A stretch of 64,000 nt of DNA from Dimorphilus gyrociliatus (taxonomy: Eukaryota > Animalia > Annelida): the NCBI GenBank assembly GCA_904063045.1, contig CAJFCJ010000020.1, forward strand, positions 1,232,916 to 1,296,915, read 5' to 3'. Shown piece after piece: positions 34,799 to 49,620 of the stretch (position 1 is the first letter of the stretch; every line of letters begins with the position of its first letter). Under the pieces are notes generated by a model. The model was not told the origin of the DNA. It saw nothing but the letters and a program-made list of their open reading frames with translations, and searched no databases. The translations under genes and the position numbers were made by a program.

Positions 34799-37700
34799 AT
34801 GTCTGATACTGCAACGGCATTCCTGCATATAGGAGACATTGTCTCTCTTTATGCAGAAGGGAGCTCCAGCAATGGATTTATGTCAACTCTCGGGTATGTC
34901 AAGTTTTATAATTGCGTAATCAACAGTCGCTGAAATTGTGACTTTTCGCTTGCAGATTAGTAGATGATCGATGTGTAGTACAACCAAGTAGCGGTGACTT
35001 GAATAATCCACCAAAAAAATTTAGAGGTAAAAACATTCTATTTGCTTATAAGGTTATCGATTATCAGTTATCTGTCAAATGCAGATTGCCTTTTTAAAAT
35101 ATGTCCTATGAACCGTTATTCGGCCCAAAAACAATTTTGGAAGGCCACGAAACAACATGCTCCCCATACAGACGGAACATTATTGAAGAAACTACAGGTT
35201 CGTTAAATTGTAAATTCCCCCTGGCTTTCCAAATAGCATCAATTTTATCTATAATTTAAGTAGTTTTATCTAAAACTTTGATAAGCTGTAAAGAATCGTA
35301 ACTGATGAGGAATTTCTCTTGATAAAATTTATTTGGATTTGAGAGAAATTGTATTATTAAATTATAGAAATTCATATGTCAATTAGGAACGTTGTAAATG
35401 CAACGTACAAATAGATTTAGTTATGGCAGTACTCTGTCGTAATTATGCATTAATTGATAAAATATATATAGCACTGTGGAAATTAACGTATATATATATA
35501 TTTATATAAGTATATATATTCATATTCATTTTCATAGCATGCTGCCGATTTGGAGAAGAAACAGAATGAAAATGAAAACACGAAGCTATTGGGTGATATT
35601 GTCCAGTATGGGGGTGTTATTCAGGTAGAAAATTAGCTTTTATTTACGAAATTCAATGGTCTAATTGACATTTATAATTCAGCTTCTTCACGTTAAATCA
35701 AATAAATATCTTACGGTCAACAAAAGGCTTCCGGCACTTAAGGAAAAGAATGCAATGAGGGTAATGCTTGATGCTTCTGGAAATGAGGGATCTTGGTTCT
35801 ATATTGTTCCATTCTATAAATTACGTAGTCCAGGCGATAGCGTTAGTTTAAATCGCTTTTAGAATTCAGTTTTAATCCGGGTGTGGTTTTAATATGAATC
35901 CTACAGGTTGTTGTTGGAGATAAAGTCATCTTAAATCCTGTAAATGCTGGGCAACCTTTACACGCTAGTAAAGCGGAACTAGACGATAACCCAGGTAAAT
36001 TAATTAGCAATTGGTTTGAAAAAGATTACCAAGCTTAAGATGGACAGTTGATGCGACTTAATTGTATTACATAGGTTGTCGCGAAGTAAATTCAGTACAA
36101 TGCAACACAAGCTGGAAAATTACCCTCTTTATGAATCATAAGGAAAACAACGACGACTATTTAAAAGGGGGTGACGTTGTTAGGTTATTTCACGCCGAAC
36201 AAGAAAAATTCCTCACTGGGGACGAATACAAGAAAAAGCAATATGTATTTCTTAGGACTACAGGGCGTACTTCAGCTACAGCAGCTACGTCCTCAAAAGC
36301 TCTCTGGGAGGTAGAAGTTGTTCAATTAGATCCTTGTAGAGGAGGTGCCGGACAATGGAAGTCGTTGTTCAGGTTTAAGCATTTGGCAACTGGTCAATAT
36401 TTGGCAGCGGAGGTAAATAAAGAGAATGAATCTTGAAACTTTTTGGATATCTCTTATTTCTTATTGAAGAAATCTCATAAAATATTTACAATTACAGGTG
36501 GATAACGACGAAACACCAGATATTATGCGTTCAAAGCTAAAGGCTGGTTTCCAAGTACTTCATCTAGTATGCGTTCCCCACGGTAATGATCCAGCTTCTG
36601 TCTTCGAATTAGATCCTACAACAATGACAAAGCAAGAAAACTTTGTACCAAGGTTTGTACTTTCCACTAAAGATTTATAACCTTTTATAAATGCAAAAAA
36701 AAGATGCCATCGCAATAGGTTCTGCAGTGTAAACTGCGTCGTCTAATGATGATTTTTCAGACAATGTCACGTTCGTTTACGGCACTACGAAACGGAGCTA
36801 TGGGTCCACAGCACTAATTTGCAATTGCATTATCATTTCGATATAAATCAGGACGGCGACAGAGCATGTTATAAGGTTATTGGTCATTTGGCTTATGAAC
36901 ATTTTTTTTAAAAGAATTCTGTAGAACCTGTTGCTGTGGGCTTCTTTTTCGTTAATTACTTTTCAACACTGCTTTCGATTAGCATGATTTTTTTTAATTC
37001 TACTTTTTAAATAATCAAAAAAAAAACAACGATTGGCAGTTTATAATATTACTAACTGTTTGCAATTGCGGTGCTGCTTGTTTTTTTTACGCAGATCGTC
37101 CTTCGTAAGGCTTAGACATTTGTTCACGAATACGTGGGTACATTCCACGTCGATTCCGATTGATAAAGAAGAGGAAAAACCTATTATGAGTAAGGTAGTA
37201 ACTAATTTTTCTTCACTCTGTAACTACTAATTGCTTGTAGCTTATTAATTCTCATTCCATAATATGATTTTTATAGCGTTAATATTTTGCTGGATTTTAA
37301 GTCTATATCTATTTAAATAGGATCTAATGCAAAATTAATATTATGAAATAACATCTAACACAGATTGACTTTAAATCCAGTTTTTTACGTATTGTCTATT
37401 CTATATTTAAGGTGGTAATATAATATTGCAAACATTATAGCTTGGATGTGCTAGAACGAAAGAAGACAAGGAAGCTTTTGCAATTGTTCCCGTTTCCCCT
37501 CAAGAAGTAAGGGATTTAGATTTTGCAAATGACGCTTCGAAAGTTTTGCAAGCAGCTGCTAATGAGTTGGATAGGGGGAATTTAAATCAAACTCAACGTC
37601 GTTTAATTGAACAATTGCTGAGAGAAATAATATGCTTTGTGGCCCTATTGGATACACAATCAACGGTTGATCCATTAGAAGTTGTGATCATTAAACCTGA

Positions 37701-40700
37701 CAGGGAACGCCCAAAGCTATTGAGAGAACAAAATGTTTTGAAGCAACTTTTTAGGATTCTTCAAGCTCCATTTCAGGGTGATAATCCACAATTTCGTTTA
37801 GAAGATTTAAAAGGAAATAAACACGCTGGCTATAAATATATATGTAAATTATGCTATCGAATACTTAAACTATCACAACAAAGTTATCGAAAAAATCAGG
37901 AATATATCGCAAAACATTTCGCCTTTATGCAAAAGCAGATTGGTTATGACATCTTAGCAGAAGATACAATAACCGCCTTGTTACATAACAACAGAAAATT
38001 ACTAGAAAAACATATAAATGAATCAGAAATAGAAACTTTTGTAAGCTTAGTTAGGGAAAATGGAGAATCTAGGTAAATTATCAACTATTAATCTTTTTTT
38101 TTCTTTTTTAAATTAACTGTTTAAGATAATTAGCTTTAATGATAAATATTTTTTTAAAGAGCTAATTATTTTATATCTCTTTTCATTTTAAAATAAATTT
38201 AGATTTCTTGATTACCTATCGGATTTGTGCGTCTCCAACAATGTAGCCATTGCTCGTACACAAGAATTAATTTGCAAGTCAGTCTTGTGTCCAAAAAATC
38301 AGGACATTTTAATAAATACGAGGTAAGAAATGTTCTCGAAAAGAGAGATTAGTTATTTTAAGTATTTTATACATTGTAGGAATTTAACTATAAATGTATA
38401 CCGTATATATATATTTATATATGTTCTTCTGTTGCAGCTGTGCTAGAGAAAAAACCGAAATTTTGCAAACTGAATATGAGAATGGTGTTGAAAAAAGAGT
38501 ATTTGAGTCAGAAGGAAAAATTGAACAAATTTATATAAAGATTACGAATAGGGAAGATCCCACTGGACCGAGAACAAATCTATTGCTACATGAAGTTGCT
38601 GATGTTGTGAAAGGTGGCATTTTAAGATATCCGAATACATTCGAAAAGCAAAAGAAGCTATTAGATTATTATCAGTGAGTTAAAGATATATGCACTATAT
38701 ACATATATACAGTATACACTGTATATTTTATTTTGTCTTGTTTTTTATACATTTATAAATATATAAATCTAATCTATACAGGCATCAGCTAGACTTGTTC
38801 GCCAATATGTGTATGGATCGTCAGTACCTGGCTATAAATAATATTCAATTTAAAATCGAATTAATGCTAAGGTAAAAATCCTTTTTATACTTTTAAGAGG
38901 CATTAATATTTAAAAAAAAACGAAACAAATAGATGTATTGCTGATGAAGAGTTCCCGGATGACTTACGAGCTTCGTTTTGCCGTCTATTCATTCATATGC
39001 ACGTTGACAGAGATCCACAAGAGACTGTTACCCCAGTTAAATATGCACGTCTTTGGGATGATATTCCGACAACTATATCAATTGACAATTATGAAAAAGG
39101 TAAAGCTAAAGAGAAATGTGAAGAACGAAAGAAATTTCAAAAAACAATTAAATTCGTTGAGGAATATTTGACAAACGTTGCTGTGTCTGCAAAATCTTTA
39201 TCAAGTATGGACAGTGGCAATAATTCTTTAACTTTAGAAGTTGTAAAATTAGCTAGACATCTTATATATTTTGGATTCTACTCTTTTAATGAATTATTAA
39301 ATTTAACAAAAACACTTCTTTCAATTTTGGATTGCGTAACTAATAGTACTGCTCCTACTGCTCAAGTTGATGTTAATTCCTTAGCTATGATGAAACCTGG
39401 TTTACATAATATAGCTAGTGTACTAGCTCAAGCGCAAAAAACGGTTCAGAAATCTGACGAAGAAGACGTTATTGTAATGAATACTAAACTGAAAATAATA
39501 GAGATCCTACAGGTGAGTATCATAAATACAATTATTAGGACATATTTCAATAAGTTTTTAGGAAAGACGCATATTTTCAAATAAGTTATTGACAGTTTAT
39601 TATGGATGTGAGGAAGGATTATCGCATCACGTGCGTCTTATCAATATTTAAAAAAGAATTCGACGCCAATGCAATGCAATCTGCAGGTTAAAAAAATTAG
39701 AAGCGCTACTAGATTTATTAACACTATTCTTAAAAAACACGCTAATCTAAATTTTTACTAATCTGCTTAATACGATATTTTCATTGATTTTATTTATAAA
39801 AAAAAACAAAACACTATTCATGTATACGCACTAGGTTTAAAAAAAAGAAGTCAGTAATCAAACAGATAGTATAAAGTGGAAAAAAAAAGAAAAATTGTAT
39901 TAGTTAATTGTATTAATAATCTTTTGTTCTTGAATGAAAAATCTTTTTCTTTTTTTTTTTTAAAACACATCAAAACGTAAAATTGCTACAGTTTATATTG
40001 AATGTTCGATTGGACTTTCGAATTTCCTGTATTCTATCGGTCTTCAAACGAGATCACCGAGCCGGAAACGGTGAGAGGAGGATATTTTCAGTTCATTTCG
40101 TTTCCATTTTTTCCTGCACGTTTAAAAAAAAAACGGCATGTCTGCACGTATACCTTTTTTCTCATACAATAGAAAAAAATTTATTTTTATTCCTTGGAGA
40201 AAACAGGAATAAATGGGTCATGTCTGAAAATAAATCTAAAAGGGACGAGAGATTATCTAAGGAATAATAATTCTAAAAAGTCCTTTTTATATTTAAAATA
40301 GAAAACATTAGTTGCTTATTGTGCCTTTTTCTCTTTATATGATTAGCCTTATACAAGTATATTAATGAGTATAAGCATGTAGATATTATATTTATATAAT
40401 TTCTACATGTCTCTATAATTTACAATTTAATGTATATAGAGTGGTAAAGAGCTCTTATGTTGATTTATCTTATATCCATCTATCAATCTATTGTGCTGTC
40501 TTTGCACAGATATATATATATATATAACTGTATTATATATTAATATATATATATATATATATATATACAGTATACTGTATATATAACTACAGTATATATC
40601 TACATATATAATATACCTTATATCTATAATAATAATAATTCACCTTATACCCTTACATGTTTATACCTTAAACAAATTATTTAAATATCCGTATTTTATT

Positions 40701-43700
40701 AATATATATTTTGTTTTCAACTTTAGGTTTGGATTTGGAGAGTATAGCCGCACAAGCCGAAGATATATTTGGCGGAAGGTAGGTTAAATATTATTTAAAA
40801 ATTTACAATAGATTTATAAATAATTAAATGAAAAAAAATAATAATCTATTCGTGTCCAGCAACTACAGAAGGTATTGTAATTATTAAATTATGTTAGGGC
40901 ACATTTTGGCGCACGAACAACTTTTTTTTTTCTTTTTGTTTTTTAAAACATTTTTTTCTCATTATATATATTTTTTAATATATGAAAAATTGAGATTATT
41001 GTTGTTTATTTAGTATTTACATATATAATATACACATATACTGTATATTTATAATGTACTCGATATTAATTATTTTCAATTATATAATTGTTTTTTTTTA
41101 ATTTATATTTACTTTTGAATAAAATAGTGACTACAGTGCGGAATTGGATCTTGATCGACAAGGGGGTAGAATGTTTTTGAGGGTTCTACTCAATTTGGTT
41201 ATGCACAATTACCCACCGTTAGTCTCTGGGGCTCTACAGTTGCTCTTTAGACATTTTTCTCAAAGGCAAGAAGTTCTTTTAGCGTTCGAACAAGTTCAAT
41301 TATTAGTTCAGGCCGACGACGTCGAGAATTATAAAGTTATAAAATCAAATCTTGATCAACTAAGAATTTTGGTTGAGAAATCTGAATTATGGGTATATAA
41401 ATCCAGCAAAAAGAAAAAGAAATCTGATAGTTCGAAGGATGAGAAGAAAAAGGAGAAGAAGAGACCGTTAGATATAATTACACCTACTTTGGGGATGTCT
41501 CATATCGATTTGAATCATGGTCCAAAAATTGATTCTACAGCTGCCGAAAATTATAAGTCAATTCAGGAGATATTAAAGACATTTATAGCCTTATGTTATA
41601 ATGATGCAACAGCAGCCCCTAAAGTATACGAACAGCGTTTGCTAAGGAATATGAACGCTCATGAAGTTGTTTTGGAACTTTTGCAAATACCGTACGAAAA
41701 AAGCGAAGATCATAGAATGATTGAAATTATGCAAAAGGCGCATGAATTTTTACAAAAATTCTGCCTGAGCAATGCCCCAAATCAACAGCTATTATTTGGA
41801 AGTTTAGAGTTATTTTTAACGCCAGGTTTATTGGAAGCTCAAACAGCTAAAGCAATATTTAAAGATAATCCAACTCTATGTAACGAAGTATCGGAGAAGG
41901 TTGTTAATCATTTTGTCCATTGTATTGAAACGAATGGAACTTACGTTGAATATCTACATTTTTTACAAACAATTGTCAAATGTGACAAACAATATATAAG
42001 GAAAGCGCAGACGGCAGTAATGGCAGAGGTTGGTAAATTATTATACTTTTAATAAGACATACTTTAAATTATTATAAATTAGGACTCAGCCTAAAAGAAA
42101 AAGAATAAATTATATTTGTTTTTTTCTTTTTTTAAAATATTAATATCTTTATTAATTCTATAAGATATAAATAATTTATTATTATATTTAACGTTTTTTT
42201 TTTCCTTTTTTTTTGGTTTACTTTCATTTTTTTTTTTGCCTTATAAAATAGATTTCTCGTATAAATTCTCAGGTATTTTCACATAATAATTTTTTTCATT
42301 ATTTCTCTCTCTCTCTCTCTCTCTTATTTCTTTCTTTTTTTTTTCAACAAAATTTCCTAATTTTCTCTTCTTTTTCATTTTTAATACTACGAAAAGAAAT
42401 TAAAAAAAGCCTTAAAAATAATTCATTTTAATAATTACTATAGCTTATATACTTTTTCTTGCTATAGTTTATCATTCGTTCATTTTCTTCTTTCTATCTC
42501 TCCATCTTTTTAACTTGTACAAAAACGCAAAACCATACAATTACAATTTAATTAGCTAAACTAATTCATAAAAATAGAAATAAAATATTTTTTTCTTATG
42601 GAAATTCATCCAAAAAAATCAAAAAAAAAAATCATTAATGAATTTACTAATTACAATTTCATGAATGCTTAAAAACACTCTTATTGCATCTCTGAATTAG
42701 CGCAACGCTGAAGTGATATATAATCGAAAAGCTCAAGATCTAGTTATGGCTTCCGTTAGTACTAATCGTAGAGTATTCGCTTTATTGTTTCGTTTTACAA
42801 AAAAAAACAGAAATTTTTGCACTTGATTATTCTTTTATTTATTATTGTTATAGTTATTTTGTTTTTTTCGTTTCGTTTATGTACGGTATACATTCATTTA
42901 TATATTTATATATATATATATATGTATATATATATTTATATTTATATATGTATATATTTTGTCACTATGTTATTAATGGTTTAGAAATTTGATGGCTTAA
43001 GTCTAGCGAAAGTAGCAAGAATTGACAAAAGTATTAAATATATCGTGTTGCAATTTTGTAGTTTTTTTTTTATATAGCTAAAGAAGATTTGTATTATTTT
43101 CACCACAAAAAAGAAACACATTAGCAATTATTATTTTACTTTACAGACTACACCAAAAAAGGAGTATTTACGTTGAGGGAGGGTAATGTCACTGGGGAAA
43201 TGAGAGGTTTGGGAGAAATTTTAAGCTAGACTTAAGCCTTTTTTTTTTGATTGATTTTAATTCAGGAATTTCTTTTTTTCCCCTTCTCTTTTTAGCTGAT
43301 TAATGTTGGGGAAGATGTATTAGTTTTCTATAATGAACAAAATTTTGGCAAGTTGGTCACGCTGATGGAAGAACAAAAGAATAAACTACTCGATCATAGA
43401 TCACCATTAAATTATCATATTAACTTGGTGAAATTGCTGTCTTGCTGTACAGAGGGGAAGAATGTTTATACCGAAATCAAATGTCAATCTCTTCTTCCTC
43501 TAGAGGATATCGTCAGAGTTGTATGTCACGATACTTGCCTGGTTGCCGTTAAAGAAGCCTATATTAACTTTCTAAATCATTGTTATGTTGACACCGAAAT
43601 GGAAGCAAAAGATATATACAGTTCAAACTATATGTGGCAATTGTTTGAGAATTTCATTGAAGATATGAATAAAGTTTTGAAGATTGCTGCAATGGATTCG

Positions 43701-45236: not shown

Positions 45237-48200
45237 TATATATAAATGTATATATATATATACACCTAGTTATCTGTTTGTAACATACTTAACAGTGTAC
45301 TTTATTTTATTTTTCTCTTCCAGAGTAAAAGAATTTGCTTTTTCTTGCTCTCTTTTACTGACGAATGTTTTTTTTTGTTATATTTTATTAGGGTGAAGCT
45401 CTTAGACAGTCTCTCCTTACACGCTATTATGAAGGATTTGGACAGTCGCGTAGAAGGAGTAGTATATCTTTTACTGCAGACAGAATTAAGCCAAATGTCA
45501 TTTCTAGGGCAGAAATGACTCTTCACCATGTCCAGTGCCATTTAGATCGGGAAGGAGCTACTGATCTTGTTGTTGATTTAATTATAAGTGACCATTCCCA
45601 CCGAATCTTCTTAGAAACAATTGAACTTGGAATAGCCTTATTGGAAGGTGGTAATAGAGATATTCAAAAATCCTTATTGAAGAGATTACAAAATGATAAG
45701 AATTCGGAAAAGTTTTTCAAGGTTTTCTTTGATAGAATGCAATTGGCTCAACAAGAAATTAAATCCACTTCTAATGTTGGAACATCCGATGGCCTTGGCG
45801 AACAAAAGGATGAAGAAAAGGATGTCACACAACAAATACACCAGTACAAACAGACGAATGGGAGTATAATGAGCCATAATATGAAAGAGGAAATGAATGA
45901 AGCTGCCGTTAGCACTAGTAAAGCTATTCTTACAGTTAGAAAGCAGAGGCTAGATACCCTAGCTACCGGCAGTCCGGATGAACTTCAAACGGACGATGGT
46001 TTGGATAAAGACAAACACAGGGATGAAAAAAAAATGTCTGCAGATATTCTAGTAATGCAACCAATACTAAGATTTCTGCAGTTGTGTTGTGAAAATCATA
46101 ACTTAGAGCTTCAAAATTTCTTAAGAATTCAAAATAACAAAAATAATTATAACTTAGTTTGTGAATCTTTACAATTTCTTGATTGTATTTGTGGATCTAC
46201 CACTGGAGGATTAGGCCTTTTAGGTTTATATATTAATGAGGAAAATGTTGACTTGATTAATCAAACATTAGAAACCTTAACGGAATATTGTCAAGGTTCT
46301 ATTTCTTTTACTTTATTGATATTTTATTAATAAGATACATTTTTTTTGCAAAATAGGACCATGTCATGAAAACCAAGATGCTATTGCTAGACACGAATCA
46401 AATGGTATTGATATCATAATTGCCTTAATATTAAATGATATAAATCCTCTTGGTAAAAAGAGAATTGATTTGGTATTGAAGTTGAAGGTAGAAATAGCAT
46501 TTTTCTATAAAACGTCAACTAATTATTTTTATTTGTTTTAATACAAATGAATGAAACGATAGAACAACGCGTCCAAATTGTTACTTGCCATAATGGAGAG
46601 TCGTTACGAAGGGGAAAACGCTGAAAGAATACTATATAACATGAGCCCTAAACAATTAGTAAGTAAACAGGTCTCCCATAAATACTTTGTTTCTCCCTTT
46701 TTTGATATGTCAGTATTTAGTTCTCAATTATGGAATATGGTTTTCAAGATTTTGAAAAGGTTACGCATGATATAGAAAACACACGCTTTATCTTACACTT
46801 TTTGCCCCAATAAAAATACAAATATGAGTTTTTTAATTTCAATTTTATATTTTAATGTTTTTTCATCACAAATTATAGGTTGACGTTGCCGTGAAAGCCT
46901 ATAATCAATACGAACAGTTGGAAGAAGAAGATTGTTTAGAAGACGACGACGATGATGATCAAATTAATCCTAGAGATGTTGGTCATAATATTTATATTTT
47001 GGCTCATCAATTAGCCCATCATAATAAAGAGTTGGCAGCTCTCTTAAAGAATCCTGATCCTCCAAATCCGGCTCTAACCTATTACGCAAAGCACACCGGG
47101 CAAATTGAAATTGTAAGGCACGATAGAACTCTGGAACAGATTGTCTTCCCCATACCTGAAATTTGCGAATACCTTACAGCAGAAACAAAAGTAAAACTTT
47201 ATCAAACAGCCGAAAGGGATGATCAAGGTAGTAAGGTAACTGACTTTTTTGAGAGACATACAACTTTGTTTGATGAAATGAAATGGCAAAAGAAATTACG
47301 TTCAAATCCAGTATTATTTTGGGTATCTTCCCATATGAGACTTTGGAGTGGAATAAGTTTCAACTTGGCCATACTCTGCAACTTAATTGTAGCCCTGTTT
47401 TATCCCTTCTCTTCTGGACCAGGAACTTTAGATAGAAGATTATCGGGTCTGATATGGATGGCTATGATTGTGTCATTGGTTGTCGTTATAAGTACATCAA
47501 AAACTATTGGTTATCGGACATTGGTTGCTTCTGTAATATTACGGCTTATATTTTCGATTGGTCTTTCGACAACTTTATTAATAATTGGTTCCTTACACGT
47601 TCTGAATAGTACTATATTTATGATTGCTCTGATGGGTAATAGTGGAACATTTACGAAAAGTTTCAGAGAAATATTAACCGACTTCGAGTTTGTCTACCAT
47701 ATCGGCTATATAAGCATTTCACTTAGTGGAACTTTCTTTCATCCTTTCTTCTTTTCACTCCTCTTGCTAGATGTTGTATATCGTGAAGAGACGCTAGTAA
47801 ATGTCATAAGGAGTGTTACAAAAAATGGTCGCTCTATCCTCTTGACAGCAGTACTTGCTGTTATTCTGATATATTTGTTCTCGATAATCGGCTTTATATT
47901 CTTCCAAGATGATTTCCTTATGGAGGTTGCTCCCCTGGAGCCGATCGTAAACACTGACTTGGTTAAAAATGCTGCTAAAATGGCGACGAACCTCGGGCAA
48001 ACTGAAAGTTGCTCGTCTGAGAAAGAGTGTAATATGACATCGACAGAAGCAAGCTTATACGGAGTCGAAGATGATAGCGAAGTTCGAGAAAGGCATTGCG
48101 ATTCGTTGATTATGTGTATTGTAACCACTCTAAACGAAGGTTTACGTAACGGGGGCGGCATTGGTGACATTTTAAGAAAACCTAGTCAAAAGGTACGTTC

Positions 48201-49620
48201 TATTAAACATTTAAAGCTACGCTCCTTAAACAATAACGTTTATTTACCATGCCTAATATATTTTTATTTATATTATATTTAACTAATTCATACTAATCGG
48301 AATATTAAAAATTTTGGAAACGGTTTTAGGAACCTCTCTTTATAGCTCGTATTATTTATGATCTCCTCTTCTTCTTCATCGTCATTATTATCGTTCTAAA
48401 TTTGATTTTTGGAGTTATCATCGATACGTTTGCCGACTTAAGAAGTGAAAAGCAAAATAAAGAAGAAATATTAAAGAATACATGCTTCGTTTGCGGTTAT
48501 TATTAAGATATCGTCGTATTCTGCACGGATAATTCTTTTGTTTAGCTGTTTTATCCGTTTTAAAAAGCAATCATAGTCAATAGATTGTCATTAGATCTAC
48601 TTTATGTAGTTCAAACGTTAACCTTTTTTAATGGCAATAATTGAGAGTTTTTCTACCTTTTTTTTAAAAAAAAAAGGATGTACTTACCCAGCCACGCATC
48701 TATTCTACTCACCTAAACGATTGTCTACTTTCATTAATCTTGTTTTTTTTTGGTTTTTGAATGTTGTATTATTTTAGGAATCCCTCTTCATATTCCGAGT
48801 TATCTACGATCTTCTCTTCTATTTTATATTAATCATCATCGTTCTCAACCTTATCTTTGGAGTGATCATCGATACGTTTGCCGATTTGAGAACAGAGAAG
48901 CAGAATAAAGAAGAAATTCTTAAGAATACTTGTTTTATTTGTGGTTTGTTTTAGTTTGTAGTAATTTTTTTTTGCTTGTAGTTAATTTATTGTTGTGTAA
49001 ATTAATAATTATTAAAGAAAGAACACATTCCTTTGTAACCCTCTTATAATAATTTTTTCTCTTTTAAGGAAATCGTTAAGCAATTATTTTTTTAAGCGGA
49101 TATCCTTTTGGTTTTTATTCATTTAACAGGTTTGGATCGTTCATCATTCGATAATAAGTCGATTTCTTTCGAGGAACATTGTAAATCGGAACATAACATG
49201 TGGCACTATTTGTACTTCATTGTTTTGATTAAAGTAAAAGATCCAACCGAGTATACTGGACCAGAGAGTTTTGTGCACTCTATGATAGCCGAAAAGAATC
49301 TAGATTGGTTTCCACGCATGCGTGCCATGTCATTAGCGGCAGATGAAGGTGAATCAGAGCAAAATGAGTTGAGAAATTTACAAACAGCATTGGACGACAC
49401 TAAAGATTTAGTAAAACAGCTTTGCTCTCAACTGAACGAACTGAAAGATCAGGTAAGATGATTTTCTTTTGAAAAAGTTGTAAAAGTTAATATATAATTT
49501 ACTGATTGATTAATTGAATAGATGATGGAACAAAGAAAGCAGAAGCAGAGGTTTAATCTTATGCAGCCATCAATGAATCCTCTTTTGCCTACCCCAAACA
49601 CTTTAGATAACGCGCAATAA
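34799..49620 (+). CDS. ITPR: Inositol 1,4,5-trisphosphate receptor, about 27 constitutive exon positions plus multiple alternative exons
   Basis: [21 protein letters not shown] start; FLRTTGR and QSYRKNQE ligand motifs; RIH domains; [10 protein letters not shown] selectivity filter; [14 protein letters not shown] gate helix; TCF[VI]CG...HCKSEHNMW zinc finger; TAA at 49618-49620. Confidence 0.98.
36761..36875 (+). other. ITPR mutually exclusive exon 1A (115 nt): [39 protein letters not shown]
   Basis: TTTCAG acceptor, AAG|GTTATT donor, phase 2 to 0 like 1B; homologous VRLRH...WVHST. Confidence 0.85.
37095..37194 (+). other. ITPR mutually exclusive exon 1B (100 nt): [34 protein letters not shown]
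   Basis: ACGCAG acceptor, AAG|GTAGTA donor; canonical IP3R sequence. Confidence 0.93.
39596..39686 (+). other. ITPR mutually exclusive exon 2A (91 nt): [30 protein letters not shown]
   Basis: GACAG acceptor, G|GTTAAA donor, phase 0 to 1. Confidence 0.85.
39992..40070 (+). other. ITPR mutually exclusive exon 2B (79 nt): [26 protein letters not shown]
   Basis: CTACAG acceptor, G|GTGAGA donor, phase 0 to 1. Confidence 0.88.
42701..42754 (+). other. ITPR alternative exon 3B (54 nt): [18 protein letters not shown]
   Basis: AATTAG acceptor, GTTAGT donor; homologous to and the same length as the last 54 nt (41975-42028) of the upstream exon. Confidence 0.7.
44816..44848 (+). other. ITPR 33-nt cassette microexon [11 protein letters not shown] at the SII-equivalent position
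   Basis: Polypyrimidine...CATAG acceptor, GCG|GTGAGA donor, in frame phase 0, between DYGEK and GEALRQ. Confidence 0.75.
45195..45233. repeat. (TA)n microsatellite in an ITPR intron
   Basis: About 19 TA units. Confidence 0.95.
48330..48495 (+). other. ITPR mutually exclusive pore exon 4A (166 nt): [55 protein letters not shown]
   Basis: TTTTAG acceptor, G|GTTATT donor, phase 0 to 1. Confidence 0.93.
48778..48943 (+). other. ITPR mutually exclusive pore exon 4B (166 nt): [55 protein letters not shown]
   Basis: TTTTAG acceptor, G|GTTTGT donor, same length and phase as 4A. Confidence 0.93.

What the first reader, a model, noticed from the sequence alone, without database searches (positions are those of the whole stretch)
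36712..36934. 16-bp intronic stem that brackets exon 1A
GCAATAGGTTCTGCAG (36712-36727) pairs with CTGTAGAACCTGTTGC (36919-36934) at all 16 positions (14 Watson-Crick plus 2 G-U), extendable by several more pairs outward. It encloses the branch region, acceptor, body and donor of exon 1A. Both differences from a perfect repeat are wobble-compatible on the sense RNA, as expected for RNA-level selection. RNA pairing is an established control of mutually exclusive splicing (for example Dscam docking/selector); here it predicts default skipping of 1A.
Basis: partly seen in the sequence, partly recalled or inferred. Interest (0 to 1): 0.72.

Follow-up and report, generated by a model that had tools for sequence, protein, structure and literature searches.

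The report
RNA stem looping out IP3-receptor exon
In a tiny marine worm's calcium-release channel (IP3 receptor) gene, two intron segments can pair into an unusually strong RNA stem that encloses one of two swappable exons and probably makes the splicing machinery skip it, a known kind of control that could not be tested here with RNA data or related species.

Summary
GCAATAGGTTCTGCAG (36712-36727) pairs with CTGTAGAACCTGTTGC (36919-36934) at all 16 positions: 14 Watson-Crick, 2 G-U, -25.4 kcal/mol. It extends outward to 28 pairs (-38.1). The 191-nt loop holds the branch site, acceptor, body and donor of exon 1A (36761-36875).

It is more than chance. It is the strongest non-repetitive local helix in the window and in 200 kb of control DNA from the same genome. 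No shuffle of the two flanking introns reaches it (0 of 14,174). Pair probability is 0.99 in every context folded. The next-best helix bracketing any exon of this gene is -16.1. The region is single-copy and matches no Rfam family.

Exons 1A and 1B (37095-37194) are old tandem copies. Both are 1 mod 3, and their shared residues use different codons. Exon 1B is the universal type and has stronger splice signals.

Best reading (about 0.5): a loop-out stem that hides the proximal exon 1A and shortens the path to 1B. It is not a Dscam-type docking/selector system, because no second partner exists.

Conservation and exon usage could not be tested. This is a new member of a known kind. Earlier notes of this scan describe similar stems elsewhere in this genome.

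The parts
36712..36727 (+). 5' arm of the core stem (GCAATAGGTTCTGCAG). It lies in the 108-nt intron upstream of exon 1A, 33 nt before the acceptor.
36919..36934 (+). 3' arm of the core stem (CTGTAGAACCTGTTGC). It lies in the 219-nt intron between 1A and 1B, 43 nt after the 1A donor.
36698..36711 (+). Outer 5' extension of the stem: 12 further pairs in two blocks separated by single unpaired bases.
   Evidence: Pair probability of the outer block is 0.91-0.94.
36935..36949 (+). Outer 3' extension of the stem.
36761..36875 (+). Exon 1A, 115 nt, the diverged copy, enclosed in the loop. Its 3' splice signals are weaker than those of 1B (CTAAT branch candidate 14 nt from the AG, a run of 5 U). Its donor is GTTATT.
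   Evidence: The reading frame is open. 11 of the first 19 residues match 1B, and 9 of those 11 use different codons.
37095..37194 (+). Exon 1B, 100 nt, the canonical copy ([10 protein letters not shown] type found in all other IP3 receptors examined). It is preceded by TACTAAC (37050-37056) and a run of 8 U.
36498..36652 (+). Constitutive upstream exon. Its donor at 36653 lies 45 nt before the extended 5' arm.
37441..38076 (+). Downstream constitutive exon (begins [13 protein letters not shown]...). It is in phase with either 1A or 1B.

Best explanation
The two intron segments pair in the IP3-receptor pre-mRNA into a 16-bp stem (28 bp with its extension). The stem closes a 191-nt loop around exon 1A and all of its splice signals.

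Once formed, it is inferred to do two things. It withdraws the proximal, weaker exon 1A from the spliceosome. It also brings the upstream donor (36653) close to the strong branch site and acceptor of exon 1B. The effective length of the 442-nt 1A-skipping intron falls to about 190 nt, in an animal whose introns are typically about 66 nt. The result would be default use of the canonical exon 1B. Exon 1A would be included only when the stem fails to form or is opened, for example by a helicase or an RNA-binding protein on one arm.

Shown here: the stem, its stability, its position and its rarity. Also shown: the exon pair's frame logic and the relative strength of the splice signals.

Inferred: that the stem forms in vivo, that it lowers 1A inclusion, and that it is kept by selection.
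For: - The stem is exact and is the strongest complex local helix in the window and in the control DNA.
- In local shuffles, 0 of 14,174 reach it. In window-wide shuffles, 10 of 467 do.
- Pair probability is 0.994 in all contexts folded. MFE z-score is -3.8.
- Among 22 internal exons of this gene, the helix bracketing 1A is -25.4. The next is -16.1 and the rest are -12.9 or weaker.
- The region is single-copy, is not a repeat family and matches no Rfam family.
- Exons 1A and 1B are each 1 mod 3 and code the same beta-trefoil segment. Their synonymous sites are saturated while the residue core is conserved, so 1A is an old, selected exon.
- Exon 1B is the universal type and has the stronger branch site and pyrimidine tract.
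- The introns around 1A (108 and 219 nt) are longer than most introns of this gene, many of which are 43-80 nt, and longer than the species median of 66 bp (PMC7854359).
- Literature: looped-out exons are included less, and more so with more stable pairings (PMC8052449). Exons with weak acceptors are especially prone (PMC13019027). RNA pairings can offset the advantage of the first-transcribed exon (PMC8791459).
Against: - No RNA evidence of 1A or 1B usage could be obtained.
- There are no orthologous introns, so neither conservation nor covariation is known.
- Real DNA of this genome has about five times more strong local helices than shuffles, so a non-selected mutational origin is plausible (PMC8794818).
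- The other duplicated exon pairs of the gene have no comparable stem, so this is not a general device of the gene.
- The model does not explain how 1B is skipped when 1A is used. The only helix bracketing 1B is 10 bp, -10.6 kcal/mol, and not significant.
- The antisense strand of the same 266 nt also folds with z = -3.7.
Confidence: 0.5

Rival explanations
1. The stem is a non-selected inverted repeat. It arose by chance or by a local mutational event such as replication template switching, and happens to flank exon 1A. It has no maintained regulatory role, although it may still perturb splicing passively.
For: Strong local helices are about five times more frequent in real DNA of this genome than in shuffles. 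Template switching creates near-perfect stems de novo (PMC8794818). No conservation data are available. The other duplicated exon pairs of the gene lack such stems. The other strong helices seen in control DNA lie in coding sequence and look incidental.
Against: The position is very specific: both arms lie in the two introns flanking one alternative exon. The empirical chance for the alternative exons of this gene is below about 0.01. The two differences from a perfect repeat both keep pairing on the sense strand. A 12-pair extension outside the core also pairs. A compact genome with 66-bp median introns tends to lose useless intron sequence (PMC7854359).
Confidence: 0.3
2. The flanking complementarity promotes back-splicing of exon 1A into a 115-nt circular RNA. 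Linear 1A skipping would be the by-product.
For: Reverse-complementary intron matches close to the splice sites of a single exon are the classic arrangement around circular RNAs (PMC8052449 notes that conserved pairings circumscribe circRNAs). The arms lie 33 and 43 nt from the splice sites.
Against: The pairing of 16 to 28 bp is at the short end of what is usually reported for circularisation, and a 115-nt circle would be small (my own knowledge, not tested). No back-splice reads could be sought.
Confidence: 0.07
3. The stem is half of a docking-site/selector switch of the Dscam, 14-3-3 xi or srp type. One arm would pair alternatively with a second selector next to 1B.
For: Tandem homologous exons with mutually exclusive frame logic. 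Such clusters often carry competing structures (PMC6071210).
Against: An exhaustive list of helices of 7 bp or more in 36400-37700 shows no second partner for either arm near or beyond 1B. The only alternatives pair the 3' arm region with exon 1A (36802-36813, -18.8) or with the upstream exon (-15.3), and their probability is about 0.
Confidence: 0.04
4. The duplex serves as a double-stranded RNA platform, for example an ADAR substrate or a site for a dsRNA-binding protein, rather than acting by topology.
For: A duplex of 28 bp is long enough to be bound by dsRNA-binding domains (my own knowledge). An alternative 12-bp exon-intron helix (36802-36813 with 36932-36943) resembles an editing-site complementary arrangement.
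Against: Both arms of the main stem are intronic, so no recoding would result. The alternative helix has a pair probability of about 0. No RNA data are available.
Confidence: 0.04

Closest known systems
Loop-out exon skipping by complementary sequences in flanking introns (conserved complementary regions in human genes, PMC8052449; inverted Alu pairs, PMC13019027; conserved intronic stems in Drosophila, PMC2724269)
   Same: The arms lie in the two introns flanking one alternative exon. The duplex is predicted to be stable. The enclosed exon has the weaker acceptor, the condition reported to favour this mechanism.
   Different: The arms are short unique sequence, not transposon copies. The loop is only 191 nt. 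The enclosed exon is one of a homologous, frame-exclusive pair rather than a simple cassette. No expression or conservation evidence exists yet.
Docking-site/selector competing RNA structures in mutually exclusive splicing (Dscam1 exon 6, 14-3-3 xi, srp; PMC6071210, PMC4691838)
   Same: Intronic RNA pairing sits next to tandemly duplicated, mutually exclusive exons.
   Different: There is only one pairing and no set of selectors competing for a docking site. Here the pairing would repress the enclosed exon rather than activate the adjacent one.
Balancer RNA pairings that counteract first-come, first-served exon choice in Dscam1 (PMC8791459)
   Same: The proposed role is to offset the advantage of the exon that is transcribed first and has the shorter upstream intron.
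   Different: This is a single two-exon cluster in an annelid calcium-channel gene, and nothing has been tested experimentally.
Reverse-complementary matches that drive exon circularisation
   Same: Inverted intronic repeats sit immediately around a single exon.
   Different: The complement is shorter than is typical, and back-splicing could not be examined.

Membership tests
Loop-out exon-skipping stem | Complementary arms located in the two introns that flank the exon | tested here: met
   Arms at 36712-36727 and 36919-36934. Exon 1A at 36761-36875.
Loop-out exon-skipping stem | Pairing that is stable and beyond chance | tested here: met
   Core -25.4 and extended -38.1 kcal/mol. Pair probability 0.994. 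0 of 14,174 local shuffles reach it. Best helix in 528 kb of strand sequence.
Loop-out exon-skipping stem | The enclosed exon is alternatively skipped in RNA | not testable with these tools
Only the frame logic (115 and 100 nt, each 1 mod 3) indicates alternative use.
Loop-out exon-skipping stem | Arms conserved or covarying in related species | not testable with these tools
   No relatives in the genome search. The closest protein fragments are 57-67% identical. The exact open reading frame is not on record. A metagenome pattern scan gave 0 hits.
Loop-out exon-skipping stem | Disrupting the arms changes splicing and compensatory changes restore it | not testable with these tools
   This is a bench experiment.
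Docking-site/selector system | Cluster of tandem homologous exons with mutually exclusive frame logic | tested here: met
   Exons 1A and 1B code the same VRLRH..T..WVHST segment. Both are 1 mod 3 and in the same phase.
Docking-site/selector system | One docking site complementary to two or more selectors, one per variable exon | tested here: not met
   No second partner for either arm in 36400-37700.
circRNA-promoting inverted repeats | Reverse-complementary matches flanking the circularised exon | tested here: met
   Same arms as above.
circRNA-promoting inverted repeats | Back-splice junction present in RNA | not testable with these tools
Transposon-derived inverted repeat (MITE-like) | The element or its arms are repeated elsewhere in the genome | tested here: not met
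   The 440-nt region matches only itself in the 77.9-Mb genome. The 16-mer with up to 2 mismatches gives scattered, unrelated hits: 45 against 14 for the control.

The most novel reading that the evidence does not exclude
The stem is a regulated gate, not just a default repressor. In particular cells a helicase or an RNA-binding protein would open it. A candidate site is the UGU/CUG-rich stretch UGUUGCUGUGGG (36929-36940), which overlaps the end of the 3' arm. Opening would switch the IP3 receptor to a lineage-specific ligand-binding-core variant, in which the last loop of the second beta-trefoil is replaced and is 5 residues longer. That would be the first RNA-structure-controlled isoform switch described for an intracellular calcium-release channel. 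It would also be an example of structure-based mutually exclusive splicing in a spiralian, outside arthropods and vertebrates.
Probability: 0.2. Interest if true: 0.6.

Novelty: new member of a known kind. Interest (0 to 1): 0.4.

Why it matters
If the stem works as proposed, it shows how a compact genome tuned to very short introns lets the spliceosome bypass a proximal duplicated exon to reach the canonical one. It would extend RNA-structure control of exon choice to annelids and to the IP3 receptor, whose ligand-binding core would then exist in two versions. In practice it gives a small, clean test case for RNA-structure effects on splicing: a 16-bp stem, a 191-nt loop and a two-exon choice. 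If it is only a neutral inverted repeat, it is a reminder that even very improbable-looking stems occur in real genomes without being selected.

Tried and rejected
- Close relatives: the genome search has none for this genome. Word searches with the exon-3 open reading frame and the 302-aa open reading frame gave at most 57-67% identity. A degenerate exon-1A pattern found nothing in metagenomes.
- Distant IP3-receptor loci: L030 and L032, both from compact genomes, have one 1B-type copy inside a larger exon and no 1A. L034 is too short upstream. Two further contigs had no DNA available.
- L033 turned out to be a vertebrate, possibly human, IP3R1-type transcript. I looked at it once and did not use, save or search for more of it.
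- Transposon origin is rejected: the region is single-copy.
- A known RNA family is rejected: no Rfam hit at E up to 1.
- A docking/selector arrangement is rejected: no second partner.
- RNA.duplexfold on whole introns gave unrealistic giant interior loops and was set aside.
- Two shuffle scripts timed out before a faster version ran.
The 1A and 1B isoforms were therefore neither folded nor compared as whole domains.

Full report
**What is there.** The window is a eukaryotic stretch (G000 contig 20; genome 77.9 Mb in 349 contigs). Earlier notes of this scan name the animal as the miniature annelid Dimorphilus gyrociliatus or a close relative. I did not verify that. An IP3-receptor gene runs on the + strand from about 34.8 to 49.6 kb.

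The exons around the finding are as follows:
- A constitutive exon at 36498-36652.
- Exon 1A at 36761-36875 (115 nt).
- Exon 1B at 37095-37194 (100 nt).
- The next constitutive exon, starting at 37441.

Both alternative exons take the same incoming phase and end on a codon boundary. Each is 1 mod 3. Using both, or neither, breaks the frame, which is the arithmetic of mutually exclusive exons.

Both code the same segment of the second beta-trefoil of the IP3-binding core (VRLRH..T..WVHST). Of the first 19 residues, 11 are identical, but 9 of those 11 use different codons, and nucleotide identity is 42%. The duplication is therefore old, and 1A has been kept as coding sequence.

Exon 1B is the universal type ([10 protein letters not shown]). 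All 21 library IP3 receptors in which this segment could be read carry it. So do two distant compact genomes, where it lies inside a larger exon with no second copy.

**The observation.** The two 16-mers are at the stated coordinates and pair at every position: 14 Watson-Crick, of which 7 are G-C, plus 2 G-U. The core duplex is -25.4 kcal/mol. Outward it extends to 28 pairs with single unpaired bases (36698-36727 with 36919-36949), at -38.1 kcal/mol. The 191-nt loop holds a CTAAT branch candidate (36743-36747), the acceptor, the exon and the donor of 1A.

The minimum-energy folds of 266 nt and 451 nt both keep the stem, with z = -3.8 and -2.8. In partition-function folds of 266 to 2000 nt, the mean pair probability of the 16 pairs is 0.994, and that of the outer extension is 0.91-0.94.

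**Is it more than chance?** Several independent checks agree.
- It is the most stable ungapped local helix (loop 30-400 nt) on the + strand of the whole window.
- Only 10 of 467 block-wise dinucleotide shuffles of the window hold any helix as good.
- I added 20 random 10-kb pieces of the same genome and scanned both strands, 528 kb of strand sequence in all. It is still the single best helix once microsatellites are removed. The other strong helices in that control lie in coding sequence and look incidental.
- Shuffling only the two flanking introns, 0 of 14,174 trials reach -25.4. A Gumbel fit gives about 5e-5.
- Among 22 internal exons of this gene, the best bracketing helix is -25.4 for 1A and -16.1 for exon 2B. 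It is -12.9 or weaker for all the others, including both pore-exon copies.
- The 266-nt window ranks 7th of 1677 for composition-corrected folding energy. Most of those above it are AT microsatellites.

One caveat applies. Real DNA of this genome holds about five times more strong local helices than shuffles do. Shuffle p-values therefore overstate the case for selection. Using the empirical density instead, the chance that such a helix brackets one of the few alternative exons of this gene is still below about 0.01.

**What it is not.**
- The region is single-copy in the genome. The arm is not a repeat family, so it is not a transposon relic.
- No Rfam family matches.
- There is no second partner for either arm near or beyond 1B.
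- The only alternative pairings join the 3' arm region to exon 1A (36802-36813 with 36932-36943, -18.8) or to the upstream exon (-15.3). Both have a pair probability of about 0 at equilibrium.
- On the antisense strand the two wobbles become C-A mismatches, and the core drops to -16.4. The antisense 266-mer as a whole still folds with z = -3.7. Two sense-compatible wobbles have a prior of about 1 in 4, so that argument is weak.

**How it most likely works (inference).** Exon 1A is transcribed first. It has a short upstream intron (108 nt) but weak 3' signals. Exon 1B has a perfect TACTAAC and a run of 8 U, yet reaching it from the upstream donor means removing 442 nt. The species median intron is 66 bp, and its splicing favours short introns (PMC7854359).

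The 3' arm is made 43 nt after the 1A donor, about 160 nt before the 1B acceptor. The stem can therefore close before 1B exists. Once closed, it encloses all the signals of 1A in a loop. It also brings the upstream donor (45 nt from the stem) near the 1B branch site (about 105 nt from the stem).

Looped-out exons are included less, the more so the stronger the pairing (PMC8052449). Exons with weak acceptors are most prone (PMC13019027). Pairings that offset the first-come advantage are known from Dscam1 (PMC8791459). I put this reading at about 0.5.

One point remains unexplained: how 1B is skipped when 1A is used. The only helix bracketing 1B is 10 bp and not significant. Frame-shifted double inclusion may simply be removed by mRNA surveillance.

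**Rivals.**
- A non-selected inverted repeat, for instance from replication template switching (PMC8794818): about 0.3.
- Promotion of a 115-nt circular RNA: about 0.07.
- A docking/selector switch: about 0.04.
- A double-stranded RNA platform for editing or protein binding: about 0.04.

**What could not be done.**
The use of 1A and 1B in RNA is unknown to me.
- One fetched contig (L033) is a vertebrate, possibly human, IP3R1-type transcript. I looked at it once and did not pursue it.

**Verdict.** Earlier notes of this scan report similar stems at other exon pairs of this genome (GPDH and FBXL). I did not test those.

Noticed in passing
window 42994-43007 and 43225-43238: A perfect 14-bp inverted repeat (GGCTTAAGTCTAGC / GCTAGACTTAAGCC, -23.4 kcal/mol). 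It is the second-best local helix of the window and lies in the unusually long intron (about 1.26 kb) of the same IP3-receptor gene. It is single-copy in the genome. Its 217-nt loop holds a short segment flanked by AG and GT (about 43147-43182).
   Followed up: partly
window 36802-36813 and 36932-36943: A 12-bp helix (-18.8 kcal/mol) between the inside of exon 1A and the intron just after the 3' arm, overlapping that arm by 3 nt. It is the second-best helix of the locus but has a pair probability of about 0 at equilibrium. It could matter only once the 5' arm has been removed or blocked.
   Followed up: partly
window 39916-39931 and 40241-40256: A 16-bp helix with 4 G-U pairs (-16.1 kcal/mol) brackets exon 2B (39977-40075) of the second duplicated exon pair. 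It is the second-strongest exon-bracketing helix of the gene, but helices of this energy are common by chance.
   Followed up: partly
window 37057-37066 and 37425-37434: A perfect 10-bp Watson-Crick helix runs from just after the TACTAAC branch site of exon 1B to just before the acceptor of the next exon, so it would loop out 1B. At -10.6 kcal/mol it is not significant.
   Followed up: partly
window 36761-36875: Exon 1A replaces the conserved [11 protein letters not shown] loop with a longer, unrelated [20 protein letters not shown]. No 1A-like segment occurs in the 21 library IP3 receptors where this segment could be read, nor in two distant compact genomes. The copy appears to be lineage-specific.
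   Followed up: partly
window 45886-46151: This 266-nt window, inside a long coding exon of the same gene, has the third most negative composition-corrected folding energy of the window (z = -4.2). I have no explanation for it.
   Followed up: no
window 38393-38414 and 38699-38720, minus strand: A 22-bp AT-rich helix (-24.8 kcal/mol), seen only on the antisense strand, within an intron of about 450 nt of the IP3-receptor gene.
   Followed up: no
window 48330-48497 and 48778-48948: The duplicated pore-helix exons have no notable bracketing helix (-8.8 and -6.8 kcal/mol). Stems are therefore not a general feature of the duplicated exon pairs in this gene.
   Followed up: yes
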